Source: Hemiscyllium ocellatum (lineage: Eukaryota). From it: 64,000 nucleotides of DNA. The position numbers were made by a program, and so were the translations under genes. How positions within the stretch are numbered: position 1 is the first letter of the stretch; every line of letters begins with the position of its first letter. Under the pieces are notes generated by a model, which did no database searches, was not told the DNA's origin, and saw nothing but the letters and a program-made list of their open reading frames with translations. Below, piece after piece: positions 13,828-58,930 of this stretch. Location of the stretch: the NCBI RefSeq assembly GCF_020745735.1, contig NC_083409.1, positions 16,800,303-16,864,302 on the forward strand, written 5' to 3'.

Positions 13828-14400
13828 CTATTTCCAAAGCACACAGAAACAGAGACTGAATCTTCATCTTTATTCCCTTTTCCATATTCACATTGACAGA
13901 AAAAAAACCTGCAATTAACAGCCCAGACAGAGGAGGCTGTTCAAATTCACAGCCACAATGGAGCTTGAGGAAAACACTTGTGGAGGTTTGCTCAATAACA
14001 TGAGAATCCTGTCCCGTTAAACAGTGACAAAACCTTAAATTGGAACTGGTGGCTGAGCAGGAAGGAGATCTGGTTTACTGAAGCAGAGAATTCTGAGGTT
14101 CACATTGTTTTGTACAGCTGACAGTCTTCAGCAACTTCAAGAGATTTTACTTGGCATCACAAGTCAACTCTGTCCCCATCAAACACTCCCAGAACAGGGA
14201 CAGCATGGGGTTTGGCACAGCGTAAAGCTCCCTCGACACTGTCGCAATGACCTGCTTTTACATCCAAACCTCAGAAGGTTCTCTGAGCAGTCCTGAGAAG
14301 GAAGAGAGTTGAAATTCAGTGCTGACAATGACCTTTGTCCTGCCAGCTCAGCCCTGTTCTATTTAAAGTTGTGTCTCCTCTGTGGACTGTCTCACACTCT
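13828..14400 (-). other. 3' UTR of the light chain C gene with polyadenylation signal AATAAA at 13874-13869
   Basis: First AATAAA noticed downstream of the stop on the sense strand; the signal is conserved in the paralogous UTR at 2949-2954. Confidence 0.7.
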
Positions 14401-14729
14401 CTACACACATTCTGATCTCCTGATGCTCTTGCTGAGGGGAGAGGGGAGGGTCACGTGGGTGAGGGCACAGGAGAAGTGAGCGTTGGACTCCCAGTCAGAC
14501 CCAGAGAGGGTCAGCAGGCTGCTGACACTGTAGGTGCTGTCCGAAGCTCGCAGGTAGTTGCTGGTCTGAACCCCATCCGAAATGACTGCACCGTCCTTCT
14601 TCCACTGCACCTCCAGCTCATCGGGATAGAAATGGTTGGCAAGGCACACCAGGGTGGCAGTGCCCTTGGCATTGACCTGCTCCGGGGAGGGGGGCAGCAG
14701 GGTCAGCTTGGGCTGAGAGTTGTCACGGG
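14401..14729 (-). CDS. IGKC: Immunoglobulin light chain constant exon (kappa-type/type III, NS4-like)
   Basis: Acceptor cctttcag at 14730-14731, phase-1 start, open frame RDNSQPKLTLLPPSPEQVNAKGTATLVCLANHFYPDELEVQWKKDG...FSCALTHVTLPSPLSKSIRRSECV*. C1-set Cys/Trp/Cys and the penultimate Cys for the H-L disulfide are present; TAG at 14403-14401. Confidence 0.97.
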
Positions 14730-17700
14730 CTGAAAGGCAAGAGAAACAGTTTTAATCCCTGCCATTTGAAGGGAATTCAACCCTCACAATATTCACTGGC
14801 AATACAATCTTTTTGAACATTTGTAGTCAACAAAAGAACAGACACTTTTCAAATTGCTTCTTGGGATCTGAGTGTCACTGGCAGGGCCAGCATTCATTAC
14901 CGTCCCTAGTTGCCCCTGAGAAGGTGATGGTGAAGCAGCAGAGAGAGAAGGGACAGTTTTGGACCATCGGTTATGGAATGAATGTGGGCATCTGGAAGGG
15001 CTATCAATGTGGGAGCATTTTAGTGACAGTGATCAGAACTCAGTGAGATTGAGAGTAGGGATGGAAATGGAGAACCATGGAGCAAGTGTAAAAGTTTTCA
15101 TTTTATGAAACTGTGCGGTGCTTTGGTAAAAGTGGATCGGAACCAATGGCATGATGGGAAATCAGTGTCAGGGCAGTGGGAGCCCTCGAAGGATGAGACA
15201 GACTGTTCAGAATCTGTTCCCACAATGAGTAAGGGTGGGACTTCCAGATCTAGACCAAATGAACAAGAGGATTGGGGTTCATGTACAGACTTGGATTGGG
15301 AACTGGTTGGCAGGCAGCACAGAAAGAATGAGTCTTTTTCTGAATGGCAGGTAATTACAACTTAGGGTGCCACAGGGGTCAGCCCTTGGTACCCAGTTAT
15401 TCATAATATATCACAATAGAGTCATAGGGACCCAAAAGGCCCATCAGCCCATTGTGTCCATACTGGTCAAAAAATAACAACCCAATAATTGTCATCCATT
15501 TTTCCAGCAAAAGGGAATTAGATGCAATGTGTATTTATGAAGGAATTAGATATACTTAGGATTAAAGGGATCAAAGAATGTGGGGAGAAAGTAGGAACAG
15601 GGATCTGTGTTGGATGATCAGCCATGATCATACTGAATAGTGGAGCAGGCTTGAAGGGCCGAATGGCCTACTGCTGCTCCTGTGTTTGATGTTTCTATCT
15701 GTTTCTCAGATAATGAAGGAATGTCTCTCATCATGTTGAAGCTGGAAGTCAGATGTGTGTGGAGCTGGAAGATGTGGCCATGGTGATTAATGAATGCAGG
15801 TCAGCGAGGTGGTTCCAGAAGACACATGGGAGAAACTGTTTTTCTTCTTCCCTTGATGGAATGAGGGCATTGCTGGATCGGCAGCATTTATTGCCCATCC
15901 CTAATCACCCAAAGGGCAGTTTAGAGTCACCCACATTGCTGTGGGTCTGGGGTCACATGGTAAGGATGGCAGTTTCCTTCCCTAAATGACATAAGGAAAT
16001 CAGATGCTTTTTCATGACAATCAACGATGGTTTCATGGTCATCATTAGGCTCTTAATTGCAGATGTTTTTTGATTGAATTTGAATGCCACCATCTGCTGG
16101 ATTCTAACCCTGGTCCCCAGAACATTACCTGGATCTCTGGATTAACAGCTCAGCAATAACACCATTAGACCATCACCTCCCTTATCTCATTTTTGGTTGA
16201 CTGTGAAAGCAAAGAGTTTGTTTATTCTGGAACTGTATGAAACCCCAGTTAGAGCACAGTGAGAGACCTGTGTATGGTTCTGGTCACCACATTACAGGAA
16301 GGATGTGATCTCTCGAGAGACCAGGACAGAGGAAGAGTTTGTCTGGAATGGGGACTTTGAGCTTTAAGGAATGGTTGGATTGGTTGGGAATGTTTTCGTT
16401 GGAACAGAGGAGGCTGAGGGGAGATTTGATGGTGGTGTGTAAAATGATGAGGGGCCTGGACAGAGTGGGTAGGAAGGACTGATTTCCACCAGCACAGAGG
16501 GCAATAACCATGGGGAGAGATTGAAATCAGTTGGGGGCAGGATTATAGGGGAGTTGAAGGTATTTGTTTTCAGCCATAGGTTGGTGGGATGTGGGACTCA
16601 CTGTCTGAAAGGGTGGGAGAGGCCGAAACCCTCATCATATTGAAAAAAACACTTGGATATTCACTTCAAACAGCAAAACCTCCAGAGCTATGGAGCAAGA
16701 GCTGGAAAGTGGGATGGAGCTCGATATCTCTTTAACAAACCTCCGATCACCCACAGATCAGGAGAACTTTATCCAAGAACATTGGAGCAGACTCGAATCC
16801 ACACACTTCATGAAAGAGTCACATTGTGTGTCTGTGTAGAAGATTCTAGATTATATTTCAAACCTTGCTGCACACTATTGGGCTGAGCTCAAGGGTGAGG
16901 CTGCAAAGAGTCTCAGTGTCCTAGGGTCAGACAGGGTCACTGCTCCTAATGACCCCATGACTCCTGGAAAGTGAGAGTGCGCAGACAATGGATGAGGATC
17001 CAGATCAGGAGACTCCAACCCTTAAAGAAAGACTTGCATTTGTGTACCACCTTTCCCCAACTCAGGATGTCCCACTGGATCTTTCCAGCAGACTGTGCAC
17101 AGCGAGATCCCAAACCCCATGTGATAATTAGCAGAGAAATACATTTTGAGTGATTTTGACTGGGGAATAAATATTGACCAGGGACACCAGGGGGAAATTA
17201 CCTGCTGTTCATCCAATAGTGCCATGGAATGGCATCTTTCACAACTGAAAGACTCTCAGTTCATCGAAAACATGAAGAATAGTTCCTTGAAGATGAAGTT
17301 GCAGGAAGGTAGGGGAGTGACAAAGTCATTTGGTTTGCTTTCCTTTAATGGGCACTGCATTGGGTATTGGAGTTGGGAGCTGTTGCGGCTGTACAGGGCG
17401 TTGGTTAGGGCACTTGTGGAATACTGTGTGTAATTCAGTTCTCCTTGCTGTAGGAAAAATGTTGTGAACCTTAAAATGATCCAGAAAAAATTTACAAGGA
17501 TGTTGCCGAGGTTGGAGGGTTTGCGTGAAAGGGAGAGGCTGAATATGCTGGGGCTGTTTTCCCTGGATCATTGCAGGTTGATGGGTGACCGTACCAGGTT
17601 TATAAAATCATGAGCAGCATAGATAAGGTGACTAGAGAAGATCTTTACTCCAGAGCAGGGGAGTCCAGAACTGGAGGGCATAGGCTGAAGGTGACAGGGG

Positions 17701-18189
17701 AAAGATTTAAAAGGGACCTAAGGGACAACGTTTTCATTCAGAGGGTGTTAAATGTATGGAATGAGCTACCAGAGGAGGTGGTGAAGGCTGGTACAATTAC
17801 ACCATTTAAAATGCATGGATATGTAAATTGGAAGATGTTAGAGGGATATGGGCCAAATGCTGCCAATGGGACTAGATTAATTTCGGATATCTGATCAGCA
17901 TGGACGAGTTGGACCAAAGGGTCTGTTTCTGTGCTGTCCATCCCTCTGACTCTAATTGTATTTCAATCCAGCCCTTAACACTTCAGGCTCTCCCAAAGAC
18001 ATTTACAGACAGTTTTGTTTGACAAGCAGTCACTGTTGCAATGTCAGTAACGTGGCAGCCAGTTTCTGCACAGCAAGATCCCACTAGAAACAATGAGATC
18101 AAAGAGTAATAATGATGTTGGCTCAACGATAAATATTGGCCTGAACTCAACCCAAAGAGAAAGGAATTTGGTTCAGTTGGATGGAAAAT

Positions 18190-21100
18190 GAGAAAATGGA
18201 AGGTAAAGGAGAAGGTAGGATTGCCGGTTAGTGATGGGATTGATTGTTACCAAAAAATAAAAGAAAGGGATGGAAGTTTTGAACATCAAAGGAACCATGA
18301 AAGTGCAGGGAAAATCAATAATAGTACAAACTTACAGAGGTTGTATCTAAATGCACAAAGCATTCCGAGTAAGGGAGTAATAGTGATGCCACACATTGAG
18401 GTAAATTGAGTTTCTAAGGAATTTAAACTAGTTAAAGTGGAGGAGGGCTCAGGAAAGGTTATTCAAGTTTCTAGAAGATGTAAAAGGACAGTGAGTACAG
18501 AAAGGATCAGGAATCGAACATAAAGCACAGCAGATAAGGGGACAATGATGAGAAGGAGGGCAGTCAATGCAGGACTGAGGGTGTTGTACTTAAATGCACA
18601 CAGTATACACAATGAGATTGTAGTGCAGATTGAAACTGGCAGGTACGGTGTTATGGGTATCACAGAGACATGGCTGTAAGGGGATCCAGGCTGGGAACTA
18701 AATATTCAAGGATACATGTCCCATCAAAAGGACAGGCAGATGGGCAGAGGGACAAGTGTTGCCTTGTTAGTGAGAAATGAAATTAAATCTATGGCAAGAA
18801 GTGATGGAGAGTCAGAAGGTGTAGAATCTGTGTGGGTAGAGTTGAGGAACTGCAATAAACAAAGAATCTGATGCAAGTTATGTCCAGGTCTCCAAGCAGT
18901 AATCAGGGTGTGGGGAAGGAAATCAATCAGGAGACAGAAAAGTCATACACAAAGTATCAGGGCAGACCTCAATGGATAGGTGGACTGCGTAGCGCGGCTC
19001 AAGGAAAGGATTTCGCGGAATGTCGACGAGATGGATTTTGGAGCAGCTTGTGGTTGAGCCATGATGGAACAGGCAGGTCTGGATTCAGTGATGTGTAACG
19101 AGGAAAACTTGATTAGTGAGTTTAAGGTGAAAGTATCCCAATGGATACATGACAATAATACGATAGAATTCCCCTGTAGTTTGAGAGAGAAGCTGCAATC
19201 AGATTGAACAGTATTTCAGTTGAGTAAAGGTAACTCCAAAGACATGAGGAAGGAGCTGGCCAGAGTTGGTTGGAAGGGGAGCCGAGCAGGTAAGATGGTG
19301 GGGCAGCAAACAGCAGAGTTTCTGGGGGTAATTCAGGAAGCAGAGCAGGAATTCATCCCAAAAAAGAAGAAACATACTCAGGGGAGAACAAGGCAACCAT
19401 GGCTGGTGAGGGAGGTCAAGGACAGCAGAAAAGCAAAAGAAAAAGCACACAATGTGGTGGAGAATAGTGGGAAGCCAGAGGATTAGGAAGCCTTTAAAAA
19501 CCTGCAGGGGATAACTGAAAAAGCATTAAGGGTGGAGAATGTGAAATGTGGGAGTTATCTAGCCAGTAATATAAAAGAAGATTGCAGGAGTTTTATCAGG
19601 TGTATAAAAAGGAAGAGGGAGTCAAAAATAGACTATGGATCACTGGAAAATGAGGCTGGAGAAAGAATAACAGGAAATGAAGGAATAGCAGAGGAATTGA
19701 ATAGATACTTTGCATCAGTCTGCACCATGGAAAACACCAGCAGTGTACCAGTAATTCAAGACTGTCAGGGGTCGGAGGGGAGTGCAGTGGCCATCACTAA
19801 GGAGGAGGTACTGGGGAAGCTGGAAGGTCTGAATGTGGATAACGCACCCAGACTGGACGAACTACACCCATGTGTTATGAAGGAGATCACTGAGGAGATT
19901 GTGGAGGCATTGGTGATGATCTTTCAGGAATCAATGGAGTCAGGGTGTGGAGGAGGGGTGGGGACGGAATTGGTGGGGGCAAGGGACAGGAAAATGGCTC
20001 ACATACCACCCCTGTTTAAGAAGGGAGGGAGGTGGAAGATGGGACATGATAGGCCAGTTAGCCAGGACTCAGATGTTGGTAAGGTTTTAGACTTCAATTT
20101 AATGATGAAATTGCAGAGGATTGGAAGTGCAATGGCTTCATCAAGGAGACGTCATGCCTGGCAAATCTGTTAGAATTCTTTGAGGAGGCAATGAGCCAGT
20201 CAGACAAAGGAGAGTCCGAGGAAGTAATCTATTTGGATTTTCAGAAGGCATTTGACATAAGATAAGCGCCCACAGTGTTAGGGGCAATGTACTGACATGG
20301 ACTGAGGACTGGCAGGTTGGCATAAAGCAGAGCGTGAGGAAGAATGGCCGCTGGTGACGAGTAGAGTTCTGCAGGTGTCAATGTTAGGACCATAACTATT
20401 CACGTTATACATTAACAATCTGGATGAAGTAAATGAAGACATTGTTGCTCGTGACATGAGGTAGGTGGAGGGACAGGTAGTGTTGAGGAAGTGGGAAGGC
20501 TGTAAAAGCTCCTCGATAGGCTCAGAGAGTGGGCAAAGAAGTGGCAGATAGAATATAATGTGTGACAGTGTGAGGGTGTGCACTTTGGGAGGAAGAAGAG
20601 ATGCAAAGATGGTTTGCTAAATGAGGAAAGCCTTTGGAAATCTAAAGCACAAACCACATTCAGGTTTCTCTTCAGGTTAACAGGCAGGTCCAGTTTGTGC
20701 TTGGGAAGGCAAATGAAATAATAGCATTCATTTCAATAGGGCCAGGATACAAGAGCAGAGATGTACTGCTGAGGCTGTGTAAGAGTCTCATCAGACTGAA
20801 TTTGGAATATTGTGAGCAGATTTGGGACCCCTATTCTAAGAAACAATGTGCTGGCATTGGAGGGGTTTACAAGAATGATCCTGGGAATGAAAGCCTTGTC
20901 ATATGAGGCGTGCTTGAGGACTCTGGGTCTGTACTCGATGGAGTTTAGAAGGATGAGAAGGGATCTTATTGAAATTTACAGAATACTGATAGGCCTGGAT
21001 AGAGTGGATGGGGAGAAGATTTTTCCATAATCAGGAGAGACTCAGTAACCAAGGCACAGCCTCAGAATGAAGGGCCGACCCTTTCGAGCTGAGATGAGGA

Positions 21101-21310
21101 CTTTCTTCAGCCAGAGGGTGGTGAATCTGTGGAACTCACAGCGACAGAGGGCAGGGGAGGCCAAGTCACTGAGTGTATTTAAGACAGAGATAGATAGGTT
21201 TGTGATTGTAAAGGGGATTGAACGCAGAAGAATGGGGGTGAGAAGCATATCTGCCAAGATCAAATGGCAGAGCAGATTCAATGGGCTGAATGGCTGATTT
21301 CTGCTCCTAT
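18190..21310 (+). mobile_element. CR1-clade LINE(s), decayed endonuclease and RT
   Basis: APE start LYLNA.SI, ITETWL; RT-region ORF 19532-20173 (PLFKKGGR...RPVS); CR1 3' tail; many stops and frameshifts. Confidence 0.88.
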
Positions 21311-21439
21311 TTCTTAAAGACTTCTGGTGAGTTTCCCCAAAACCCTGGAACACTGAACCCACTGGACTGTGAGCCCTGCTGGAGCTGTTTGTCATCAGAA
21401 CTTTGCCAAGAGATAACCAAAGAGTGGAGAGAGAATGCA

Positions 21440-24400
21440 TCCATGTGGGAATTTCAGAATGCTTCCTAGCTCCTGGAATACCATGAGTACAGGAAGTGTG
21501 GTCATTGACAGCAGTTGAAGCTCCGGATTTCGGAGCTTGAGCAGCAGCTGGTGTCAGTGCGGACCGTCCGTGAGGCTGAGAGCTCCATGGAGAACACGTT
21601 TCTAGATGTGGTCACTCCGCAGCTTCAGAATATGCAGGGAGTGAGGGAATGGGGGAGCAGCAGACAGTCCAAAAGGACCAGGCAGCTAGTAGAGGAATCC
21701 CCTGAATGCATCCCACTCTCCAACCAGGATTCAGTTTGGAATCCTGATGAGAATGATGGTTCATCTGGGGAGTGCATCCAGAGCCAAGTCCATGGCACCA
21801 CTGGTGACTCAGCTATATTGTTGGGGGGGTGGTGGTGGAGTGGGGGGGAGGGGGGTTAGTGTAAGGAAGACTGATCGTGAAAGGAGATTTGAGAGTGAGG
21901 GCATCGATAGGTGTTTCTGCAGCTGCAGATGGGAATCCAGGATGGCGTGTTGTCTCCCTGGTGCCAGGGTGAAGAATGTCACTAAGCGACTGCAAAGCAC
22001 CCTGAGGGGAGAGGGGAACAGGCAGCAGTTTTGGTCCACATCGGTCCCAGTGACAGAGGGAGAAAAGGATGTAGTCCTGCAATTAGAATTTAGGGGGCGC
22101 TGGAGAGAATTAACATCAGGAACTCAAAGGTAGAAATCTTCAGATTACTCCCAGTGCCCCAGGCAAGTGACAAGAGGAGCAGGAGGATAACACAAGTGTC
22201 TGTGGGGCTGGAAAGAGGATCCAGGAGGGAGGGTTTTAGATTCTTGTGACATTGGGACTGGGTCTGGGTGAGATGGGACCTGGATAGACCAGACAGCGCT
22301 GCTCCTGAACAGAGCTGGCACTGAGCTCCTTTGAGGTGATCTACTCGTGCTGTTGGAGAGGGTTTAAACTAACTTGGCAGAGCTGTGGGAGTCAGGAGGA
22401 ACTGTCAGAGAGGAACACCAATGTCCACAGAATCATTAGTGCAGTCAATAAGTTACCACCCAGTGGGATGGATTTAGAGGACTACATTTGCAAGGAATTT
22501 ACAGAGACCTGCAAATATAATAGTCATTATTTTTTTTTGGGGGGGGAGCGTGGAATGTCTTTAATTTCTGAATATAGACTGGGGTAGTAGCAGTGTGAAG
22601 GACAGAGGGGCCAGAGTCGTGAGAGTGTGTCCATGTGAATTTTCTCCAGCCGCAGGTTTCCAGTCCAATGAGAAAGGAGGCTCTGCGAGATCTGGATCTT
22701 GGGAATGAGGAGGACCAAGTGGATCAAGTGTCAGTGAGAGGACACTTAAGGAAGAGTGATCATTTTATCACAAAGTTGAGGGTGATGGTAAAAAAGAACA
22801 AAGGCCTTTTCAGGGTCAAACATCTTCACTGGGGAAATGCCAGCTTCTATAGGATATGGATGTATTGGATCTGAATAAAGTGGGATCAAAGGTTGGCAGG
22901 AAAGTCCTGAAAAGAATAGTAGAGGATGTGGACCAGGTATAGTCGAGATACATTTGAAGGAGGGCAAACAATTCCTGAACTTACTCAAGGGCAAAAGTGG
23001 TAGAATTATGGTAAATAAGAAAAGGGCAAAAGAGTAACTAGAGAGAGAATAGGGCCCCATGAAGATGAACAATGTACCTCTGGGTGGGTCCACAGGAAAT
23101 GGTTTAGGTCTTAAATGAATATTCCAGGTCAGTATTTATCATGGAGAAAGACATGGAAATTTGGGAACTTTGGAAGTAAATAGTAATGTCTTGACACAAG
23201 TCCACATTACAGAAGAGGATTTCTTAAAGTGCAAGACGGTAGATAAATCTCCAAGACCTGATCAGGTGTATCCCAGGACATTGTCGAAAGCTAGGAAAGA
23301 GATTGCTGGACCCCTTGCTGAGGTATGTTTCTGATTGACAGCCATGAGTGAGGTTCTGGAGAACCAGAGAGGTTGGCTAATGTTAGCCATTGTTTAAGGA
23401 AAAGCCAGGGAACTATAAACCAGTGAGCCTGATGTCATTGCTGGGTAAGTTATTGGAGTGAATTCTGAGGGACAGGATTTACATGCATTTGGACAATCAA
23501 TGCAGTTTTGTGCATGGTAATCGTGTCTCACTAACATGATTAAGGTTGTTTGAAGAGAAGATTGATGTAGGCAGAATAGTAGACACTGTCTATATGGACT
23601 TCAGCAAAGCATTTGACAAGGTTCCACATGATAGACTGATTAGTAAGGTTAGGCCACATGGGATCCAGGGGGAGCTAGCCATTTGGGTAAAAAAATGACT
23701 TCAAGATAGGAGTCAGAGAGTGGTGGTAAGGGGTTGCTTTTCAGATTGGAGATCAGATGTCAGCTGTGTGCCACAAGGATTGGTGCTGGGTCCATGGCTT
23801 TTCATCATTTAAATAAATGATTTGGATGTGAATATAGGAATTATGGCGAGTTTGTAAATGACACCAAAATTGATGGTACAGTGGATAGTGAAGAAGCTTA
23901 TCTGAGAGTACAGTGGGACCTTGATCATTTGGGGAAATGGGCAGAGGTGTGGCAAATGGACAAAAGTGCAGACTGTAGATGCTGGAAATCAGAGTTTAGA
24001 TCAGAATGGTGCTGGAAAAGCACAGCATGTCAGGCAGCATCCGAGGAGCAGAAAAATCGACTTTTCGGCTAGAGGAATCCAGATAAAGGGCTTTTGCCTG
24101 AAACGGCAATTTTCCTGCTCCTCGGAAATTGCCTGACCTGCTGTGCTTTTCCAGCACCGCTCTGATCTAAATGTGTGACAAATGGAGTTCAATTTAGATA
24201 AATGTGAGATGTTGCATTTTGGAAAATCAAACCAGGGCAGGACTTGTACTGTTAATGGTGGGGCCCTGTGGGGTGTTGCTCAACAAAGTGACCTCAGGGT
24301 GCAGGGGCAGGGGCAGGGGCAGGGGCATTATTCCTTGACAGTGGAGTCACAGGGAGACAGGGAGATGAAGAAGGTGTTGGGTATACTTGCCTTTATTGAT

Positions 24401-25140
24401 CACTGCACTAAGTATCAGAGTTGGGACATCATTTGCAGCTGTACAGGAAATTTGGGAATAATGTGAACAATTCTGATCATCCTGTGATAGGAAGGATGCT
24501 GTTAAACTTAAAATTCTTCAGAAAAGATTTACATGGATGTTGCCTGGAACTGGAGGGTTTGAACTGTCGGAAGATTATTTTTCCTGCAGGATCGGAGACT
24601 GAGGGGTGGCCGTATAGATGTTTATAAAACCATGACAGGCATGGACAGGGTGTATATCCCAGGTCTTTGCCTTGGGAAAGGGAATCTAAAACTCGAGGGT
24701 ACAGGTTTAAGATGGGAGGCAAAAGATGCAAAAGGGACCTGAGGGGTAACTTGTCACACAGAGGGTGGTGCGTGTACGGATCGAGCTGTCAGAGAAAGTG
24801 TTGGAGACGGATACAATTATAGCATTTAAAAGATGTTTGGATGGGTACATGAATAGGAAGGGTTTAGAGGAATGTGGGTTAAATGCTGGCAAATGGGATG
24901 AGGTCAGTTTTGGATATCTAGTTAGCATGGAGAAGTTAGACTGAAAGATCTGTTTCCACGCTGTATGACTCCGTGACCATTAGAGGCTGGAAAAGCTGAG
25001 ATCTTTTACCCTGAAGTGCTGGAGGCTGAGGAGTGACCTTATAGAGGTTTATAAAATCATGAGGGACATAAATAATGTGAATAATGCAGGAAGGAGGTGA
25101 ATGTTTTGTAGAGCTGGCAAACTTATGCACAAAGATCATT
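21440..25140 (+). mobile_element. CR1-clade LINE with ORF1 (coiled coil plus esterase-like CCLPGARV motif) and decayed ORF2
   Basis: LRISELEQQL, RMACCLPGARVKNV, QWDLDHLGKWAEVWQMEFN. Mirrored at 59900-63420. Confidence 0.85.
23961..24178. mobile_element. Palindromic PLE-end hairpin inserted in a CR1
   Basis: TSD CAAATGGA at 23953-23960 and 24179-24186; absent at the paralogous site near 60800. Confidence 0.88.
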
Positions 25141-25205
25141 CCAGGGATGAGGAATATCAGTTATGAAGATAGATTGGAGAATTTGGGACTGCCTTCTTTG
25201 GAGAA

Positions 25206-25407
25206 AGTTACAGATCACACAACATCAGGTTATAGTCCAACAGGTTAATGTGGAAGCACTAGCTTTTGGAGCACCGCTGACAACCATTTGATGAAGGAGG
25301 GGCGCTCCGAAAGCTAGTGCTTCCAAATAAACCCTCTGTTGGACTATAACCTGGTGTTGTGTGATTTTTAATTTTGTCCACCCCAGTCCAACCCCCGCAC
25401 CTTCAAG
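25206..25407. mobile_element. Palindromic PLE-end hairpin, second family
   Basis: TSD TCTTTGGAGAA at 25195-25205 and 25408-25418; core-like TTGATGAAGGAG..GCTCCGAAAGCTAG; absent at the paralogous site near 59775. Confidence 0.82.
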
Positions 25408-25858
25408 TCTTTGGAGAAGGCAGCGAGGAGAATTGTTCCAGAAATTCAAAATCAGGAGGGGCCTGGAACAGAGTAAATAGGGAGAAAATGATTCCACTTG
25501 TGAAAGGATTGAGACCGAGAGGCCACAGATTGAAAGTAATTGAAAAAGTAAGAAAAGTGAGATGAGGGAAAACATTTTCAGCCAGTGGGTGGTTAAGGTG
25601 TGGAATGCACTGCCTGAGAGTGTGGTGGAGGCAGCTTCAATTGAAACATTCCGAAGGGAATGAGACTGTTATCTGAAAAGGAACAATATGCAGGGTGACA
25701 GGGAGAAGGCAGGAGAATGACACTCAGTGAATTGCTCATTCAGAGAGCTAGTCCAGACAGGATGGATGGAATGGCCTCCTTGTGCACTGTAACAATTCTG
25801 TGATTGTGTGATTGAGCAGAGTTAAAGCTGGGGGAGGTGGGAGCTCGGTGTCTCACTG

Positions 25859-25860
<2 letters not shown>

Positions 25861-25893
<33 letters not shown>
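25861..25893. repeat. (CTG)11 microsatellite in the J-C intron; paralog (CAG)12 at 59305-59340
   Basis: Direct reading. Confidence 0.95.
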
Positions 25894-26268
25894 AGGTCAG
25901 TGAGATCAGAGACTGGGACAGGGAGCCAGAGCTCACATCAAACTCTGCCCCGTGTCCGTCACACTGAGACTGGCAGGAGGCTACTCACTGATTTCACTCC
26001 ATGCTGCAGGAATGGGACCACAGGCTGCAAATGGACAGAGCTCCTCCACACAGTGAGTAAAACTGACTGACTTATATCTTGCTTTTTTTAAAGAGGGCAT
26101 GAAAGTAAAGAAATACAGCTGGACACCCTGTTAGACACAGTGCTCCTCAATCAACCATTTCATTCACTGCAGCTTCCCACTAACACCTTCAACAAATCAG
26201 TAACTGTATTTTAGAAAGTGTGTTTCAGTATTGACAGGGTTAATAACAGAGGATTGAGGTTTACTTAC

Positions 26269-26598
26269 TCAGTCTGAGCTTGGTTCCTTTACCGAACGTG
26301 TAAGGCCAGCTGTAACCTTGCTGACAGTAATAGTCAGCGACATCCTCATTCTGAACGTTGCTGATTGTCAGGGTGAAACTGGTCCCTGATCCACTGCCGG
26401 TGAATCGCTCGGAGACTCCTGTGAATCGAGTTGTTGCACGATAGATCAGGAGAGAGGGTTTCTGACCTTCTCGCTGCTGGTACCAGTTAACATAGTTGCT
26501 AACAGATTGACTGGCCGTACAGGTGAGTGTTGCGGTCTGGTCCCGTCCCACTGACAGCACCGGGGGAGACTGGGTCATGCTGATGTCCCCACTGATAC
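26269..26598 (-). CDS. IGKV: Fused VJ exon of kappa-type light chain (V 26598-26303, J 26302-26269)
   Basis: [13 protein letters not shown]...TC...WYQQ...[15 protein letters not shown] continues directly into [11 protein letters not shown] with no RSS. Acceptor cccctcag; donor A|GTAAGT. The 330-nt exon is phase 1 at both ends and splices in frame to the leader and C. Confidence 0.97.
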
Positions 26599-26784
26599 CT
26601 GAGGGGTCAAAGAGAAACACAGTGAAGTCAGAACTGTCACAGAAAGAGCCGGTCAAATGAGAGATTGTTGGAGACACTGAGCATTCCTCTGGTTTCAGCA
26701 TTTTCCCTTCAATCACAAGTCAGTGGAATTGGAGTGAAATGGAGAGCAGCGAAAGATTCAAGGTGGAAGGAGAGAGATTTGTAC

Positions 26785-26833
26785 CTGCGACACAGAATGC
26801 CAGGGGCCAGATCAGCTGGATGTGTGAAATCAT
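26785..26833 (-). CDS. Leader (signal peptide) exon of the joined cluster, MISHIQLIWPLAFCVA(G)
   Basis: ATG at 26833, 49 nt, donor G|GTACAA, 186-nt intron to the V exon. Same layout as the plus-strand cluster. Confidence 0.93.
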
Positions 26834-26893
26834 GGTGTGTGCTCCTGTCCCTGTGCCTGGTTCCTGATAAACTCTCCCTTCACTGGGCTCTGC

Positions 26894-26947
26894 TTTATAA
26901 AGCTGCAGCCTGTGAGAGTCTGACTGGGTGTTCCTCAGTATGTAAAT
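26894..26947 (-). promoter_or_regulatory. V promoter: TATA-like TTTATAAA (26894-26901) and variant octamer ATTTACAT (26947-26940)
   Basis: Position and spacing upstream of the leader ATG match Ig light-chain promoters. The octamer differs from ATTTGCAT at one base. Both motifs are shared with the plus cluster. Confidence 0.7.
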
Positions 26948-28029
26948 GGCATCAGGCAGAGAGAGCCACGTCCTCATACTTCCTCTTCTCTCTCTTTCTA
27001 TCTCACTCTCTCTGTCTCAGAGTCATTGATGTGAACAGCACTGAATGAGGCCATTTGGCCCATTGTGTCTGTGCTGGTAAACAAAGATCTGATGACACTA
27101 ATCCCATCCTCCAGCTCTTGGCCCATTACCCTGGAGGCTACAGCAACACAAGGGAATATCTAAACACTGCTCCAATTGTCACGAGAGTTTCTGACTCAAC
27201 CAGCCTTTCAGGCAGTGAGGTTCAGACTCTCACCACCCTCTGGGTGAAAACATTTCTTCTCAACTCTCCTCCCACTCTCCAACTCGCCTGGCTATGGACT
27301 CCCTCGTGTTCAGAACGATGAGAGGGGATCTGATTGAAACATATAAAATTGTAACTGGGCTGGGCAGGGAGGAGGTTTCCCCTGGTTGGGAGTCTGGAAC
27401 CAGGGGACACAGGCTCAGGGGGATACAGGGTTGACCATTTCGGACTGAGATGAGGAAACATTTCTTCACTCAGAGGGTGGTCAACCTGTGGAATTCTCTA
27501 CCACTGAAGGCTGTGGAGGATAAGGAACTGAATATATTCAAGAAAACAAGAGAGAGATAATTGTTTTGCATTTTAACAGCTTGAAGAGAATGGGGAGAAG
27601 GCAGGAATATGGCTTTGAGAGAGAGGATCAGCCATAGATCTTAGAATGCCTACAGTGTGGAAACAGGCCATTTGGCCCGACTAGTCCACACCGACCCTCA
27701 AAAAAATGATGACATTCAAAACTTGATACAGCCATGATCATACTGAATGACAGAGCAGAATCAAAGGGCCGAATGGCCTACTGCTGCTCCAAGTTTCTAC
27801 GTGTCCATGTCTGTGTTACCTTCAATCTCTGTACCAGGTTATTAAATCCTTTACTGATGTAAAATGTGCCATCCTACCTACCCTATCATTGTCCTGAATA
27901 ATCTTATCCCTCTCTATCAGGTCCCTTTTGAGCCTTCACTGCTCAAAGCTCACATTCAGGCAGCATCCTGGAAAATCTCCCTGTACCCTCTCAGGTACAA
28001 TCACATTCTTCCCAGAGTGTGGTGACCAG

Positions 28030-28648
28030 GACTTGTCCCTCTCTCTCTGACTCACATCTGCCATTTCTTTCTCTCTACCTCTATCTCTCTCTCCTAATGT
28101 TAATCTCTTTCATGTTCTCTCCCTCTCTCTCTCACACACACACACGCGCTCTGTCTCATAGCCACATTCTCCAACTCACTGATGCTTTCTGACTACATCT
28201 TATCATCTGTTTCGCCTTCTCTCACTGTCTCTGTTACTCGCTCCCTCTCTCACTCAGCCTCCAATTGTTACCTGTCACTCTCTATTCCTCCCTCTTTCTC
28301 TCTCCCTCCCTCTCTATCTTCCAATTTACAGTCTCTCTCCCTCTCTCTCTGTCATTATAAATCTACCCATACTCATCTCTTTCTCTCACAATCAACCCTA
28401 CCCTCCCTCTCAACTCTCTTCATGCTTAGTCTCACACCCATCCTGTCTCTTTCTCTCTCTCTCTCTCCTTGTCTCTTTGTCTCTCTCCATCCCTCTCAGT
28501 CACACTGTCTCACATCTTGTTTTTCTCTCTCTATCCCTCAACCTCACCATTTCTACCTCCCTCTACCTCTCTCTTGGTCCCCTCACATATCTTACACCGT
28601 ATCAGATGCTCGTCCCTCTATCTCTCTCTCTCACTTTCTTTCTTTCTT

Positions 28649-28682
<34 letters not shown>

Positions 28683-28740
28683 TATTTTTCCCTCCATCTC
28701 TCTCTCTCTCTGCCTCACTGCTCTCTCTTTCTGACAGTGT
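28030..28740. repeat. Long CT-rich low-complexity tract upstream of V; GA-rich mirror at 56290-56750
   Basis: Direct reading. Confidence 0.9.
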
Positions 28741-29569
28741 CCTGGGTGGTGACAGTTGAATGCAGGATAAATCTCCCTCTGCTTTGCCCCACTAATGGAT
28801 GTTAACCCTTGACCCCTGTCTTCTCCTTGGGTAAGGCCCTATTTCCACGTTGACCAGGGTTTGGTCTTTCTCAGGAAGATGGACAGATTCTGGTCAAATG
28901 AAGGGCAGTTCTGTGCTGTTGGCCTATTCTCACTGGGGACTGATTTGGACACAAACCTCATTCCGTGAAGGCCCAGCAGAGAGAGGAGATCCTCAGATCA
29001 TCAGCGTGAGTTCGAGGGGAGACAGGAGAGGCTCTGACCCACTGACCCATCCTGTCCATTCACAACATGTTCCAATCCTTTCCCCTCTCCTTCCCCTTCC
29101 ATGGTCAGTCTTTTCTGAATGGAGAGGTCCCTTCCCTGTCTCACACCAAGGAGGAGATGGACAGATATTTAATGGGTAATGGGTTAAAGGATGATGGAAA
29201 GTGGGCAGGAAAGTGGAGTTGAGTCTGAGATGGGATCAGCCATGATTGTATTAAATGGTGGAGTGGGCTCGAGGGGCTGAATTGCCTGCTCCTGCTCCTA
29301 GTTCTTATGTTCCTCCACCCTCTCCCCCATCCCTCTTACTGCAACTTTGTGAACATTCTTGGAATGCTTGGACATCGAAGGAGTTATGTGAATTCAGGAT
29401 TTGTGTGGATTTAATGTGGGGACAGAATTGCACACGGGCTGTGATAGATCCTGCGGGTGAATATCCTGCTGGCAGGCTCCCGCCTTCCATATACAGAATG
29501 GGGAAGTGGGGGATGTCGGAATGTACTGCCGGGGTACACGGCACTGTCCTCTAGCAATGTGGTTGACTC

Positions 29570-31690
29570 TCTAGTGCCCTCTGAAATGGCCGAGCAAGGC
29601 TCTCAGTTGTATCAATTATGACAATGTTTCAACAAAGAAATGAGACCGGACGGACCACAGGCATCGATCTAGACACCGAAAAGACAAGGACAGAAACAAC
29701 CCTGTCTACCCTGCTCCATCCTCCTTACTGACATCTGGGAGCTAGTGCCAAATTCAGGAGAGCTGTCTCACAGATGACTCAAGCAACAGTCTGACACAGT
29801 CACACTCACAGAACCATACCTTACAGACAATGCCCCAGACACCACCATCACTGTCCCTGCATGTGTCCTGTCCTACCAGAAAGGCAGACCCAGCAGAGCT
29901 GATGACACAGTGGTCTACGGCCAGAAGGGAGTTACCCTGGGAAGTCTCAAAGTTGTCTCCCGTGAAGACTCATGACACCAGGTTAAACATGGGCGTGGAA
30001 ACCTCCTGGTGATTACAAGATATCTTGCTCCCTCGGCTGATGAATCAGTCTCTCCTGGATGTTGAACAACATTTGGAGAAAGCACTGAGGGTGATGACAG
30101 CAGAGAGTGTACTCTGTGTGGGGGGGTTTCAATGTCCACCACTGAGAGTGGCTCGGCAGCAGCATTACTGATCGAGCTGGTTGGTTCCTCATGGATGTAG
30201 CTGAGGGACTGGCTCTGCAGCTGGAACCAAAGAGATGGAAAAAGTTGCTTGACCCCATCCTCACCAATCTTATGGCTGTAGATGCATCTATCCTTGACAG
30301 TATTGGTAAGAGTGACCATCACACAGTCCTTGTGGAAACAAAGTCTGTCCTTCACATTGAGAATCCCCTCCATTGTGTTGTGTGGTACTATCACCGTACT
30401 AAATAGGACAGACTCCGAACAGATATTGCAACTCAAGGCAAACTCTTATTGCACAATGCTCAGCACTCTTCCCAACTCCTCAGATACTGAAGCAGTCCAC
30501 ATGCAAATGCAACAATATCTGGACAATATCCAAGTTTTGTCTGAGAAGTGACATTTCCCATTGGTGCCATGCAAATGCCAGCCAATCACCATCACCAATA
30601 AGAGACAATCTAAACATCGCCCCTTGACAATCAATGCTATTACCATCACTGAATCCCCACGATCAACATTCTTGAGGTGTCATTGACCAGAAACACAACT
30701 GTATTCACCAAAGAAACACAGTGGTTACAAGAGCAAGTTAGAGGCTAGGAATACTGCATCCAGTAATTCACCTTCTGATCCCCCAAAGCCTGTCAACCAA
30801 GTCAGGAGTGTGAGCAAATACTCCCCACTTGCCTGGACAGGTGCAGCTCCAACAACATTCATAGATTGATAGTGTCACAGAGTCAAACAGCACAGAAACA
30901 AACCCTTAAGCCAAACTTCTACATGCTGACCAAGTTTTCTGAAGTGAACTCATCTTATTTGCCTGCGTTTCACACATATCCCTTGAAACCTTTCCTATCT
31001 ATGTCGATTGTATCCTATGTCTTTCTTATCCACTCAAAAAGCTTGATACCATCCAGAGCAAAGCAAACTCCTTGATTGGCATCGCATTCTCAAAGCATCC
31101 AAACTCACCGTCACTGACGCTCCATAGCAGCAGTGTGTATTATCGATAAGATGCACTGCAGAAATTCATCACTGATCTTCAGATAGCACCTTCCAAACCC
31201 ATGGACAAAAATAGAAATTTCAGGAAAAGCTCAGCAGGTCTGGCAGCATCTTGGAGAGAAATCAGAATTAACATTTCGGGTTGAGTATGAAATATTAACT
31301 CTGATTTCTCTTCACAGATGCTGCCAGACCTGCTGAGCTTTTCCAGCACTTTCTATTTTTGTCTCAGATTTACAGCATCTGCAGTTCTTTTGGTTTCCCT
31401 TCAAACCCACGTTCACTTCCATTTAGAACAAGAGCAGCAGATACATGGGAACACTGTGAGCTGCAAGTTCCCCTCGAAAAAGCTTAGCATCCGGACTTGA
31501 AAATATGTCGCTGATCCCTCAGCCTTGCTGGGTTAAAATGCTGGCATTGTGGGTCAACTTACAGCTTGTGGACGATAACAATTCAAGATGGCAGCTTCCC
31601 ACCACCTTCTCCAGGGCAACTAGGGACAGGGTAAAAAATGTTGGCCCAGCCGGTGATGCCCACTTCCCACAGGTGAATATGTAAAACCAA
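29570..31690 (+). mobile_element. Decayed APE-type non-LTR element of a non-CR1 family (fragments also at about 2170-2315 and 52480-52965)
   Basis: VEQHLEKALRV...VGGFNVHH..WLGS and DSIGKSDHHTVLVETKS endonuclease motifs; the clade could not be assigned by eye. Confidence 0.7.
31201..31396. mobile_element. Palindromic PLE-like hairpin inserted in a LINE
   Basis: ggaaaagctcagcaggtctggcagcatc...gatgctgccagacctgctgagcttttcc, flanked by ccttccaaaccc / cccttcaaaccc. Confidence 0.75.
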
Positions 31691-31959
31691 ATGAAGTGTC
31701 CCTCAGGAGGGGAGAGGGAATGTTCAGGATCCTGAGCTCCATTTCCCAGCCCAGGCAGTTTGTCTCCCAATGAATGAATGAGATGCCAATTTGAAGCCCA
31801 GGTTCAGGGCAGTCTCACTCTGTGGACATGAGGTCTATAAGAGGGAATTGGAGATTGAGCTATAAAAGAAAGATTTGCTTGGTTACGGGGAGAGAGAGGG
31901 GAGCAGTGGGATTAACTGGGTCATTCAAAGGCATGATGGGCTGAATGGCCTCCTCCTGT

Positions 31960-32215
31960 GCTGTCAGATTCCAGGGAGTGCAGACAGTTCACAGTTTTCT
32001 CCTGTCTCAGTAACAAACACCCAGCTGCTCCGAGCTCCTTCTTTCACTTCCTCTCTTGGTGAAGTTGCAACCTTGCGCTCTGACAGTCTTTGCAGTTATT
32101 TGTTGCACTGGGGCTTTCTGCTGTGGTCAGAATCTCTAATAATAAGTGTCCAATCAGTGACAATCACAGCAGCTAAGACCAGTCAGGACTGAGGAGCCAG
32201 GCTCACTGGGAAACA
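31960..32215. promoter_or_regulatory. Candidate lymphoid enhancer (EICE, RUNX, MYB, E-box), copy 1
   Basis: GGAAGTGAAA on the minus strand (32051-32042), TGTGGT 32122-32127, CAGTTA 32093-32098, CAGCTG 32022-32027. Confidence 0.45.
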
Positions 32216-32680
32216 CATTGGCAGGATCAAAGCCATCCTCTTCAGCTCCCAGTACAAACTCCATCCCTCTCCCTGAGCACTGTCTGCTGCTCTACCAGAC
32301 TCTTTACAACTTTGGCCTCATCTTTGGGGCTGATTTGAGGCCCAAATCCTCCACATCACGATTATCAGCCACTGAAAATCTCAACCATGTTTTTGAGACC
32401 ATTCCAATGTTATCCACGCCCACATCACAGCTACTGACTTCCGTAAACATCAGCTCATCCCAAACTCTGCTGTCAGTGTTCAAACTCACACCAAGTCCAC
32501 CCCATACTCCTGTCCACGCCTCCCTACTCCACCATGACCATCACAATCCTCACTGACTGACATAAGCTCCTGGTCCAGCAACACCTCGATTTTCAAATTC
32601 TCATCCTTGTTCTCAATCTGCTCCCTGTTCTTCCACCCTCCCTATCTCTGTGACTTCCTCCAAGCTGCCTCACTCACTGT
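32215..32680 (+). mobile_element. L2-like LINE 3' coding fragment (mirror copy 51575-52030; another at about 53760-54230)
   Basis: The mirror copy reads LQLIQNYAARIQTCTKSR..LYWLLVKQHLDFQILIVVLKSL, typical of the L2 ORF2 C-terminus. Confidence 0.7.
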
Positions 32681-32897
32681 GATCAATAATCTTGGATATA
32701 TGGCTCTCTGTTTCTTCATCCAAGTCATTGAGAAATATCGTGAAAAGCTGAGGTCCCAGCACAGATCCCTGGGAATACCACTACTCACATCTGGCTCATT
32801 GGAACACACGCACATTATCCTTCCTCTCTGTCTCTTAGACAGACCCATTCCTGACCCAAGGTAAATGCATTTCTCAAATTCCATCCAATTCCATGAT

Positions 32898-56340: not shown

Positions 56341-56404
<64 letters not shown>

Positions 56405-57740: not shown

Positions 57741-57794
57741 ATTTACATACTGAGGAACACCCAGTCAGACTCTCACAGGCTGCAGCTTTATAAA
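57741..57794 (+). promoter_or_regulatory. V promoter of the unjoined cluster: ATTTACAT (57741-57748), TTTATAAA (57787-57794)
   Basis: Mirror image of the promoter at 26894-26947. Confidence 0.7.
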
Positions 57795-57854: not shown

Positions 57855-57903
57855 ATGATTTCACACATCCAGTTAATCTGGCCCCTGGCATTCTGTATCG
57901 CAG
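57855..57903 (+). CDS. Leader exon of the unjoined cluster, MISHIQLIWPLAFCIA(G)
   Basis: ATG at 57855, 49 nt, donor G|GTACAA, 186-nt intron. Confidence 0.92.
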
Positions 57904-58089
57904 GTACAAATCTCTCTCCTTCCACCTTGAATCTTTAGCTGCTCTCCACTTGACTCCAATTCCACTGACTTGTGATTGAAGGGAAAATGCTGAAACCAGA
58001 GGAATGCTCAGTGTCTCCAACAATCTCTCATTTGACCGGCTCTTTCTGTGACAGTTCTGACTTCACTGTGTTTCTCTCTGACCCCTCAG

Positions 58090-58385
58090 GTATCAGTGGG
58101 GACATCATCATGACCCAGTCTCCCCCGGTGCTGTCAGTGGGACTGGGCCAGACTGCAACCACCACCTGTATGACCAGTCAAAGCATTAGCAGCAACCTTG
58201 CTTGGTACCAGCCGCGAGAAGGTCAGAAACCCTCTCTCCTGATCTATAATGCAGCAACTCGATTCACAGGAGTCTCCGATCGATTCACCGGCAGTGGATC
58301 AGGGACCAGTTTCACCCTGACAATCAGCAACATTCAGAATGAGGATGTCACTGACTATTACTGTCAGCAGTATAGCAGCAGCCTT
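58090..58385 (+). CDS. IGKV: Unrearranged kappa-type V segment (open frame, probably unable to rearrange)
   Basis: [23 protein letters not shown]...WYQP...[15 protein letters not shown] followed by an RSS. Some normally conserved framework residues are altered (WYQQ>WYQP, DVAD>DVTD). Confidence 0.93.
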
Positions 58386-58413
58386 TACAGTGATACAGAG
58401 CCATACAAAAACC
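58386..58413 (+). other. 12-bp-spacer recombination signal sequence with mutated heptamer
   Basis: TACAGTG (consensus CACAGTG) + ATACAGAGCCAT (12 nt) + perfect nonamer ACAAAAACC. Confidence 0.95.
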
Positions 58414-58857
58414 TCAATATGCACAACACCACCTTCTGTACTGACACATCCAACAGTTATATGAAATGTATAATAAGGGACAGATAGTCCCACCTCTTGC
58501 ACTGACACGTCCACAGTTATATATAAAGTAAATTGAACAAATTACCCCATGCTGGGTTTGTCACTGTCTACTACACATTCCAGTCCCTGTAGTGTCCACC
58601 TCTCACTGAAGGCCTCAAGTTTCCCTCTTACACTCCATGGCCACATGTGAAGAACAGCTGCAAGATTTAACAATGAAAACTAAATTTCACAAACCCCCGA
58701 GAGTAGCTGGACACAACCCAGGGAGACAGAGAGAGAAAGACACATGAATGAGGGAGAGACAGAGAGGGGTAGGGAGTGAATGAGATTGACCAAGAATAGA
58801 CAGAGACAGAGAGAGACAGGGAGAGGTTGAGAGTGACAGGGGGAAGCAGAGAGCAGA

Positions 58858-58896
58858 GGTTTTTATACAGCCTCTGCACTGGGAGCTCTCACTGTG
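58858..58896 (+). other. 23-bp-spacer recombination signal sequence of J
   Basis: GGTTTTTAT (one mismatch to GGTTTTTGT) + 23 nt + perfect CACTGTG. V-12/J-23 is the kappa configuration. Confidence 0.95.
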
Positions 58897-58930
58897 TACA
58901 CGTTCGGGAAAGGAACCAAACTCAGACTGA
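58897..58930 (+). CDS. IGKJ: Germline J segment [11 protein letters not shown]
   Basis: FGxG motif, 34 nt, near-identical to the J half of the fused exon; followed by A|GCAAGT instead of A|GTAAGT. Confidence 0.95.

What the first reader, a model, noticed from the sequence alone, without database searches (positions are those of the whole stretch)
14401..26833. Complete light-chain gene with V and J already fused in genomic DNA
Seen: leader (49 nt) + VJ (330 nt) + C (329 nt) have canonical GT-AG sites and give an uninterrupted 235-aa chain with CDR3 QQGYSWPYT; no RSS or V-J spacer remains. Established: cartilaginous fish carry germline-joined Ig clusters, including some nurse shark NS4 kappa genes, attributed to RAG activity in germ cells. 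Inference: this is an intact, inherited pre-rearranged antibody gene whose unjoined sister lies 31 kb away, so the before and after states can be compared directly.
Basis: partly seen in the sequence, partly recalled or inferred. Interest (0 to 1): 0.75.

Follow-up and report, generated by a model that had tools for sequence, protein, structure and literature searches.

The report
Intact pre-joined shark kappa light-chain gene
This is a complete shark antibody light-chain gene whose V and J pieces are already fused in the assembled genome; it is a clean, apparently working example of a kind of gene described in nurse sharks in 2000, so it is a new member of a known class.

Summary
On the minus strand, a 49-nt leader, a 330-nt VJ exon and a 329-nt C exon, all with GT-AG borders, give a 235-aa kappa-type (shark NS4/type III) light chain with CDR3 QQGYSWPYT. 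No RSS and no V-J spacer remains.

An unjoined paralogue lies head-to-head, 31,022 bp from ATG to ATG. It keeps a 12-spacer RSS, a 511-bp interval including both RSSs, and a 23-spacer RSS.

Compared with four unjoined relatives, the join lost only 3-4 nt at the coding ends and needs no added bases. Both introns are retained. This fits V(D)J-type recombination fixed in inherited DNA.

The C domain is 99% identical to bamboo-shark and epaulette-shark kappa chains, so the animal is a hemiscylliid, not a nurse shark.

A second VJ-joined kappa cluster exists in an independent Chiloscyllium punctatum assembly. Unchecked notes of this scan list at least eight more joined kappa genes, some of them dead, elsewhere on this chromosome.

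Two caveats apply. The sister is a 6-7% diverged paralogue with defects of its own, so it is not the precursor.

Verdict: real, probably functional, and already explained by Lee et al. 2000.

The parts
26940..26947 (-). Octamer-like promoter element ATTTACAT
   Evidence: Read. Identical in the sister and in C. punctatum contig L001. Lee et al. 2000 (PMC2193156) mark an octamer at this position in NS4 genes.
26894..26899 (-). TATA-like box TATAAA, about 60 nt upstream of the ATG
   Evidence: Read. Conserved in the sister and in L001.
26785..26833 (-). Leader exon, 49 nt (MISHIQLIWPLAFCVA + 1 nt), donor GT
   Evidence: The same leader occurs in bamboo-shark, epaulette-shark and nurse-shark kappa chains.
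26599..26784 (-). Leader intron, 186 bp, retained
   Evidence: It has the same length as the NS4 leader intron in Lee et al. 2000. Its retention excludes an origin from spliced mRNA.
26269..26598 (-). Fused VJ exon, 330 nt
   Evidence: Pfam V-set E 2.4e-19.
26297..26323 (-). CDR3 (QQGYSWPYT). The V/J junction lies between 26303 and 26302 (CCT|TAC).
   Evidence: It has 27 nt between the Cys codon and the TTC of J. Unjoined relatives have 24+7 nt (the sister 21+6).
14730..26268 (-). J-C intron, 11,539 bp, retained. It is collinear with the sister's J-C intron for at least 5 kb.
   Evidence: C. punctatum RefSeq kappa gene models span 9.1-11.7 kb.
14401..14729 (-). C-kappa exon, 329 nt including the stop. 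It ends ...RRSECV, keeping the C-terminal Cys.
   Evidence: Pfam C1-set E 7.5e-23. It is 99% identical to C. punctatum P0036 and H. ocellatum P0112, and 92.5% identical to nurse-shark P0043.
13869..13874 (-). First AATAAA downstream of the stop, about 530 nt away: a candidate polyadenylation signal
   Evidence: Motif match only.
57855..58385 (+). Unjoined sister: leader (57855-57903), 186-bp intron, V segment (58090-58385)
58386..58896 (+). Sister V-J interval, 511 bp: RSS12 (TACAGTG, 12-nt spacer, ACAAAAACC; 58386-58413), then spacer, then RSS23 (GGTTTTTAT, 23-nt spacer, CACTGTG; 58858-58896). This whole stretch is absent from the joined gene.
58897..58930 (+). Sister J segment (34 nt), followed by a GC donor (gcaagt)

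Best explanation
This is a germline-joined kappa (shark type III / NS4) light-chain cluster of a hemiscylliid shark. An ancestral L-V-RSS12...RSS23-J-C cluster underwent V(D)J-type recombination in a germ-line cell. That removed both RSSs and the roughly 0.5-kb interval, trimmed 3-4 nt from the coding ends, and left an in-frame VJ exon that has since been inherited. The gene keeps its own octamer/TATA promoter, leader intron, J-C intron and C exon. It can therefore be transcribed and spliced into one invariant 235-aa light chain without RAG. Any diversity would come only from heavy-chain pairing and somatic hypermutation. By analogy with nurse-shark joined NS4 genes it is most likely used mainly early in life. 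Shown here: the anatomy, the intact frame, the absence of RSS and spacer, the junction arithmetic, and family membership. Inferred: that the join is germline, that RAG did it, and that the gene is expressed.
For: The exon structure and the 235-aa ORF are intact, with V-set and C1-set domains. The alignment with the sister breaks exactly at the V coding end and resumes exactly at the J coding start, so only the RSS-to-RSS interval is missing. Three unjoined C. punctatum clusters carry 24 nt after the Cys codon before CACAGTG, and 7 nt of J before TTC. The joined gene has 21+6 nt, so the breakpoints lie within 0-3 nt of both heptamer borders and no untemplated bases are needed. Both introns are retained, so mRNA was not the template. 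The promoter, leader and intron are 97-98% identical to the sister. NS4 landmarks from Lee et al. 2000 are reproduced: a 186-bp leader intron, a roughly 500-bp V-J interval in split genes, and a PstI fragment of 736 bp for the joined gene against 1,247 bp for the split one. A different kappa cluster in an independent C. punctatum assembly (L002) is also VJ-joined with an intact ORF. C. punctatum RefSeq models P0036, P0038 and P0039 look like two-exon VJ+C genes, and P0039 is encoded at two places. Unchecked notes of this scan list at least eight further joined kappa genes on the same chromosome, four of them judged dead by follow-up agents. That number is not what capture of a somatic clone would give.
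Against: Presence at full depth in non-lymphoid DNA and in other individuals is therefore untested. No orthologue with the same junction was found: the best database match to the VJ domain is 87% identical. DNA of the chromosome-scale C. punctatum and H. ocellatum assemblies could not be fetched. Expression is untested. dN/dS on the V frameworks rests on too few changes to show constraint. The tree of six clusters is an unresolved star, so the closest split relative and the age of the join are not fixed.
Confidence: 0.85

Rival explanations
1. The assembly captured a somatic V-J rearrangement from a B-cell clone in the sequenced tissue, and the inherited allele is unjoined.
For: The junction looks like any productive kappa joint. 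No read-level test was possible.
Against: Each shark B cell rearranges one of many clusters, and junctions differ between cells, so no single joint should reach consensus depth in an assembly. An independent C. punctatum assembly also has a joined kappa cluster. Notes of this scan list at least eight more joined kappa genes in this genome, including dead ones (unchecked by me). Lee et al. 2000 showed by Southern blot and PCR in seven sharks that such genes are germline.
Confidence: 0.04
2. The gene is inherited and joined, but RAG did not make the join. It arose instead by an ordinary deletion, microhomology-mediated repair, or gene conversion from another joined cluster.
For: One T could be shared by the V end (CCT T..) and the J start (TACACG), which is compatible with microhomology. 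V paralogues here show mosaic similarity that suggests gene conversion. Other joined clusters exist in this genome and could have served as donors (unchecked).
Against: Both breakpoints fall within 0-3 nt of the two heptamer borders and the frame is kept, which a random 0.5-kb deletion would rarely do. The J and its downstream intron are collinear with the local lineage at about 92-94% identity. The CDR3 matches no joined protein in the database.
Confidence: 0.06
3. The gene is intact in sequence but functionally silent or on its way to decay. It would be a recent join that is not expressed, or not expressed usefully.
For: Expression is untested. Framework dN/dS against the sister is about 1.4, on 11 changes. 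FR1 has an unusual R-D where relatives have L-G. Follow-up agents of this scan judged four other joined kappa genes in this genome dead (unchecked). In adult nurse sharks joined NS4 genes were not detectably expressed.
Against: All 708 coding nt, three splice junctions, the octamer, the TATA box, the structural Cys and Trp residues, the FGXG motif and the C-terminal Cys are intact. Nurse-shark R4 and R18 are expressed in neonates.
Confidence: 0.2
4. The gene is a relic of the primordial, never-split V exon that predates insertion of the RAG transposon.
For: It has no RSS and no footprint.
Against: Its flanks and introns are about 92-94% identical to split clusters of the same family. The V-J interval is homologous among the split relatives and has the same size in nurse shark, so the split state is ancestral for this clade. 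Lee et al. 2000 reached the same polarity.
Confidence: 0.01

Closest known systems
Nurse shark germline-joined NS4 (kappa, type III) genes R4, R7, R18 and RE18 (Lee, Fitch, Flajnik, Hsu, J Exp Med 2000; PMC2193156)
   Same: Same isotype and cluster anatomy: 186-bp leader intron, an octamer upstream, two PstI sites giving a fragment of about 730-750 bp when joined (736 bp here), and split relatives with a V-J interval of about 500 bp. The VJ is in frame, the joint shows small deletions and no obvious N region, and the joined gene sits among split paralogues.
   Different: The species and family differ: the C domain is 92.5% identical to nurse-shark NS4 but 99% identical to hemiscylliid kappa. 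The CDR3 differs. The restriction landmarks of R4/R7 (ClaI in CDR2) and of R18 (EcoRV present, AclI absent) are not met. The J-C intron is 11.5 kb. Germline status and neonatal expression were shown experimentally for the nurse-shark genes and are only inferred here.
Chiloscyllium punctatum joined kappa-like cluster chiPu_0011747 (P0058; contig BEZZ01000502, locus L002)
   Same: VJ is fused in genomic DNA, the leader and J-C introns are retained, and the 237-aa ORF is intact. It comes from a related shark and an independent assembly.
   Different: It belongs to a divergent subfamily (VJ 74% and C 80% identical). Its J-C intron is only about 3.5 kb and its CDR3 is longer. It represents a separate join.
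[quoted passage not shown] 1995, PMC2192082)
   Same: They are inherited VJ-fused light-chain clusters that need no somatic rearrangement.
   Different: They are different isotypes in which all or most loci are joined. Here the family is mostly split and the join is a derived, sporadic event.
Somatically rearranged mammalian kappa chains
   Same: The domain architecture matches, the CDR3 is 9 residues ending P-Y-T, and the framework is FGxGTKL. The closest solved structures are kappa VL domains.
   Different: Those joints are made in individual B cells and are not inherited. Their loci have a translocon organisation rather than clusters.

Membership tests
Ig kappa (shark type III / NS4) light-chain cluster | One V-set domain and one C1-set domain, encoded as leader / V(J) / C exons | tested here: met
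   Pfam V-set E 2.4e-19 and C1-set E 7.5e-23. Exon structure.
Ig kappa (shark type III / NS4) light-chain cluster | Kappa-type RSS arrangement: 12-nt spacer at V, 23-nt spacer at J | tested here: met
   This cannot be read on the joined gene itself. The sister has a 12-nt and a 23-nt spacer, and so does C. punctatum contig L001. In L003 and L004 only the V-end heptamer and the J-side RSS23 were printed.
Ig kappa (shark type III / NS4) light-chain cluster | Closest sequence relatives are kappa / NS4 chains | tested here: met
   The C domain is 99% identical to C. punctatum and H. ocellatum 'immunoglobulin kappa light chain-like' proteins, and 92.5% identical to the nurse-shark chain P0043. Non-shark hits are Ig kappa V regions.
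Ig kappa (shark type III / NS4) light-chain cluster | NS4 gene landmarks: 186-bp leader intron, roughly 500-bp V-J interval in split genes, PstI sites flanking L-V-J | tested here: met
   The intron is 186 bp. The sister's interval is 511 bp. PstI fragments are 736 bp (joined) and 1,247 bp (split).
Germline-joined Ig genes of cartilaginous fish | V and J are contiguous in genomic DNA, no RSS remains, and introns are retained | tested here: met
Germline-joined Ig genes of cartilaginous fish | The junction is explicable by V(D)J-type processing of the coding ends of split relatives | tested here: met
   The joined gene has 21+6 nt against 24+7 nt (the sister 21+6) in four split relatives. That is a loss of 3-4 nt with no added bases, in frame. 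The direct precursor is not available, so the exact trimming is inferred.
Germline-joined Ig genes of cartilaginous fish | The joined form is present in non-lymphoid or germ-line DNA and shared among individuals | not testable with these tools
Chromosome-scale DNA of related assemblies was not delivered. Indirect support comes from a joined cluster in another assembly and from many joined clusters noted in this genome.
Germline-joined Ig genes of cartilaginous fish | Expression, typically early in ontogeny | not tested

The most novel reading that the evidence does not exclude
Hemiscylliid sharks may carry an unusually large set of intact germline-joined kappa genes. This scan's notes count roughly nine or more on one chromosome, this gene among them. 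These could together form a hard-wired, RAG-independent light-chain repertoire used in early life or by an innate-like B-cell subset. In that case this gene's mammalian-looking CDR3 would be maintained by selection for a fixed specificity or for pairing with a germline-joined heavy chain.
Probability: 0.15. Interest if true: 0.5.

Novelty: new member of a known kind. Interest (0 to 1): 0.27.

Why it matters
Germline-joined Ig genes are the standing evidence that RAG has acted on the germ line of vertebrates, and that a rearranging receptor can revert to a fixed one. This locus adds an intact example from a second shark family, with its full 12-kb gene context and a split neighbour in the same window. 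It could serve as a convenient PCR or RNA-seq target for testing inheritance, population frequency and developmental timing of expression. It does not change the picture drawn by Lee et al. in 2000.

Tried and rejected

(2) Looking for the same junction in other animals. Two protein searches were run. The second used the 150-aa open frame with region 42-150 so that full-length 235-aa chains were within range. The best match was 87% identical, with no identical or orthologous VJ.

(3) Fetching the chromosome-scale C. punctatum and H. ocellatum loci for P0036, P0039 and P0112. No DNA was delivered because the files are too large. I could not confirm that those RefSeq models are joined, or fix the species.

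(4) Identity with a published nurse-shark gene. The restriction landmarks of R4/R7 and R18 are not met, the EcoRI fragment is 4.03 kb rather than 2.1, 2.4 or 4.6 kb, and the C domain shows it is not a nurse shark.

(5) Re-inserted excision product. No other copy of the 511-bp interval and no stray RSS pair occurs in the window.

(6) Phylogeny to name the closest split relative. The tree is an unresolved star with no starred branch.

(7) dN/dS. There are too few changes to be informative.

(8) Other genes in the window. None of the seven longest non-Ig ORFs had a Pfam match.

(9) Looking this gene up in the scan's notes by CDR3 word or by sequence gave nothing.
Full report
**What is there**

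- The leader runs 26833-26785 (49 nt, donor GT).
- A 186-bp intron follows.
- The VJ exon runs 26598-26269 (330 nt, acceptor AG, donor GTAAGT).
- The J-C intron is 11,539 bp.
- The C exon runs 14729-14401 (329 nt with the stop).

The 708 nt translate into 235 residues without interruption. The protein keeps the framework Cys and Trp residues, CDR3 [18 protein letters not shown], the C-domain cysteines and the C-terminal Cys. Pfam calls V-set and C1-set. An octamer-like ATTTACAT (26947-26940) and a TATAAA (26899-26894) lie upstream. The window has one C exon and two V exons.

**The neighbour**

The second V lies on the opposite strand (leader ATG at 57855), so the two clusters are head-to-head, 31,022 bp apart from ATG to ATG. 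It is unjoined, with these parts in order:
- V ends at 58385.
- RSS12: TACAGTG, 12-nt spacer, ACAAAAACC.
- RSS23: GGTTTTTAT, 23-nt spacer, CACTGTG, ending at 58896.
- J runs 58897-58930.
- Its C exon is beyond the window end.

From 58386 to 58896, both RSSs included, is 511 bp.

The two clusters are arms of an inverted duplication: about 51,400-64,000 (+) against 32,874-20,825 (-), 80-91% identical by blastn. The alignment stops at the V coding end and resumes at the first base of J. The joined gene therefore lacks the RSS-to-RSS interval and nothing else. A search of the whole window finds no second copy of that interval. The only canonical RSS found (scan anchored on CAC, so the sister's crippled V RSS is not scored) is the sister's J RSS.

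**Which family, which animal**

The V12/J23 spacer arrangement is the kappa arrangement. Non-shark hits are Ig kappa V regions and the nearest solved structures are kappa VL domains. Identities of the C domain are:

| Compared chain | Identity |
|---|---|
| Chiloscyllium punctatum RefSeq kappa (P0036) | 99% |
| Hemiscyllium ocellatum kappa (P0112) | 99% |
| Nurse-shark chain P0043 | 92.5% |
| Lamniform, carcharhiniform and heterodontiform kappa | 80-84% |

The animal is therefore a hemiscylliid, not a nurse shark. Another agent's note in this scan calls the genome epaulette shark. My data are compatible with that but cannot separate the two genera.

The gene nevertheless reproduces the landmarks Lee et al. 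(2000, PMC2193156) gave for nurse-shark NS4 genes:
- a 186-bp leader intron;
- a 502-524-bp V-J interval in split genes;
- PstI sites that predict fragments of 727-754 bp for joined genes (736 bp here) and about 1,250 bp for split genes (1,247 bp in the sister).

It is not one of their genes. It lacks the ClaI site of R4/R7, it has the AclI site that R18 lacks, and its EcoRI fragment is 4.03 kb.

**The junction**

The sister alone is a poor 'before' state, so I fetched three unjoined C. punctatum clusters (L001, L003, L004).
- All three carry 24 nt between the Cys codon and a canonical CACAGTG, ending CCT-YGA or TCT-TGG.
- All three carry 7 nt of J before TTC.
- The sister has 21 and 6 nt.
- The joined gene has 27 nt: 21 nt that match the V pattern up to CCT, then TACACG.

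A blunt 24+7 join would be out of frame. The observed joint needs a loss of 3-4 nt, split as V minus 3 with J minus 0-1, or as V minus 2 with J minus 1-2 if the T comes from V (the lower figure if J was the sister's 6-nt type). It needs no untemplated bases. Lee et al. describe the same for their R genes: small deletions or P nucleotides and little sign of TdT.

Breakpoints within 0-3 nt of both heptamer borders, with the frame kept, are the signature of V(D)J recombination rather than a chance deletion. Retention of the leader intron and the J-C intron rules out a processed-mRNA origin.

**Polarity**

Over 1.36 kb of promoter, leader, intron, V and J-intron, the joined gene is 93-94% identical to the sister and about 92-93% identical to the C. 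punctatum split clusters L001 and L004. For L003 only the promoter-to-V half aligned. A divergent joined C. punctatum cluster (L002) falls outside this group.

The tree within the group is an unresolved star, so I cannot name the nearest split relative or date the join. The V-J interval is homologous between the sister and L001 (about 85% identical) and has the same size in nurse shark. Split is therefore ancestral and joined is derived.

**Germline or somatic?**

The chromosome-scale assemblies of related species gave no DNA. The indirect evidence is strong.
- A polyclonal B-cell population cannot give a consensus joint at one of many clusters.
- An independent C. punctatum assembly contains another VJ-joined kappa-type cluster with an intact 237-aa ORF and a 3.5-kb J-C intron (L002).
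- C. punctatum RefSeq models P0036, P0038 and P0039 start in the leader-intron reading frame and run cleanly through FGxGTKLRL into C. A two-exon VJ+C gene would give such a model, whereas models of split clusters are visibly garbled (P0042, P0050). P0039 is encoded at two places. This is an inference from the models, not from DNA.
- Notes of this scan list four joined kappa genes that follow-up agents judged dead, and four more that first readers judged intact. All are on the same chromosome, 0.4-10 Mb from this window. I did not check them.
- Lee et al. proved germline status for this class experimentally.

I put somatic capture at about 4%.

**How it most likely works**

The gene should be transcribed from its own promoter and spliced L-VJ-C to give one invariant kappa chain, independent of RAG. 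In nurse shark the joined NS4 genes R4 and R18 were undetectable in adult blood but present in neonatal spleen and epigonal organ. A joined sigma-2 chain pairs with the germline-joined IgM1gj of neonates (review PMC5192425). By analogy I expect early-life use. This is inference.

The gene may equally be a recent join drifting toward the fate of its dead relatives. Framework dN/dS is uninformative (11-15 changes per comparison). FR1 carries an unusual R-D where relatives have L-G.

**The sister**

The V regions are mosaic. The promoter-to-leader-intron stretch is 97-98% identical to the sister and the frameworks about 95%. CDR1 and the start of CDR3, however, resemble C. punctatum L001 ([16 protein letters not shown]), with no synonymous differences from L001 in CDR1+2. 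That pattern suggests gene conversion or shared CDR lineages among paralogues.

**Verdict**

The phenomenon, the isotype and the proposed mechanism were published in 2000 and are in reviews. I found no paper describing joined kappa genes in bamboo or epaulette sharks in the searchable library. This is therefore a new member of a known kind, one of several in this genome, and of modest interest.

Noticed in passing
window 58386-58392, 58931-58932, and FR2 of the sister V (about 58210-58220): The unjoined sister carries three oddities: an RSS12 heptamer TACAGTG (first base T), a GC instead of GT splice donor after J, and WYQP instead of the conserved WYQQ. Its V coding end is 3 nt shorter than in three C. 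punctatum relatives. It may be recombination-impaired.
   Followed up: partly
window 26303-26960 (-) versus 57730-58385 (+) and L001:270-940: Mosaic similarity. The promoter, leader and leader intron are 97-98% identical between the two arms and the frameworks about 95%. The joined gene's CDR1 and the start of its CDR3 match a C. punctatum paralogue (L001) instead, with dS = 0 in CDR1+2. This suggests gene conversion or CDR-lineage sharing among kappa clusters.
   Followed up: partly
window 20825-32874 (-) and 51400-64000 (+): The two kappa clusters are arms of a head-to-head inverted duplication, 80-91% identical, that includes about 6 kb upstream of each promoter. About 18.5 kb of unshared sequence lies between the arms.
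   Followed up: partly
L002:6001-10428 (C. punctatum BEZZ01000502.1): A divergent kappa-like cluster (VJ 74% and C 80% identical) is also VJ-joined in genomic DNA. It has an intact 237-aa ORF and a J-C intron of only about 3.5 kb.
   Followed up: partly
P0036, P0038, P0039 (C. punctatum RefSeq, GCA_047496795.1): These gene models begin at an ATG inside the leader intron (MLKPEEC...) and run through a clean VJ into C, as expected for joined clusters whose leader exon was missed. P0039 is encoded at two places on the same chromosome. The DNA could not be fetched.
   Followed up: partly
P0019: An 89-aa shark kappa V fragment (leader MISAIQLIWPLAFCIAG) is filed in NCBI under Salmonella enterica on a 299-bp contig. 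It is almost certainly contamination of that assembly.
   Followed up: no
window 1446-1908: A tandem array of a 33-bp unit: 14 copies, 76% matches.
   Followed up: no
window 54277-54402 and 55649-55805: Two short arrays of a related 44-bp unit lie upstream of the sister cluster.
   Followed up: no
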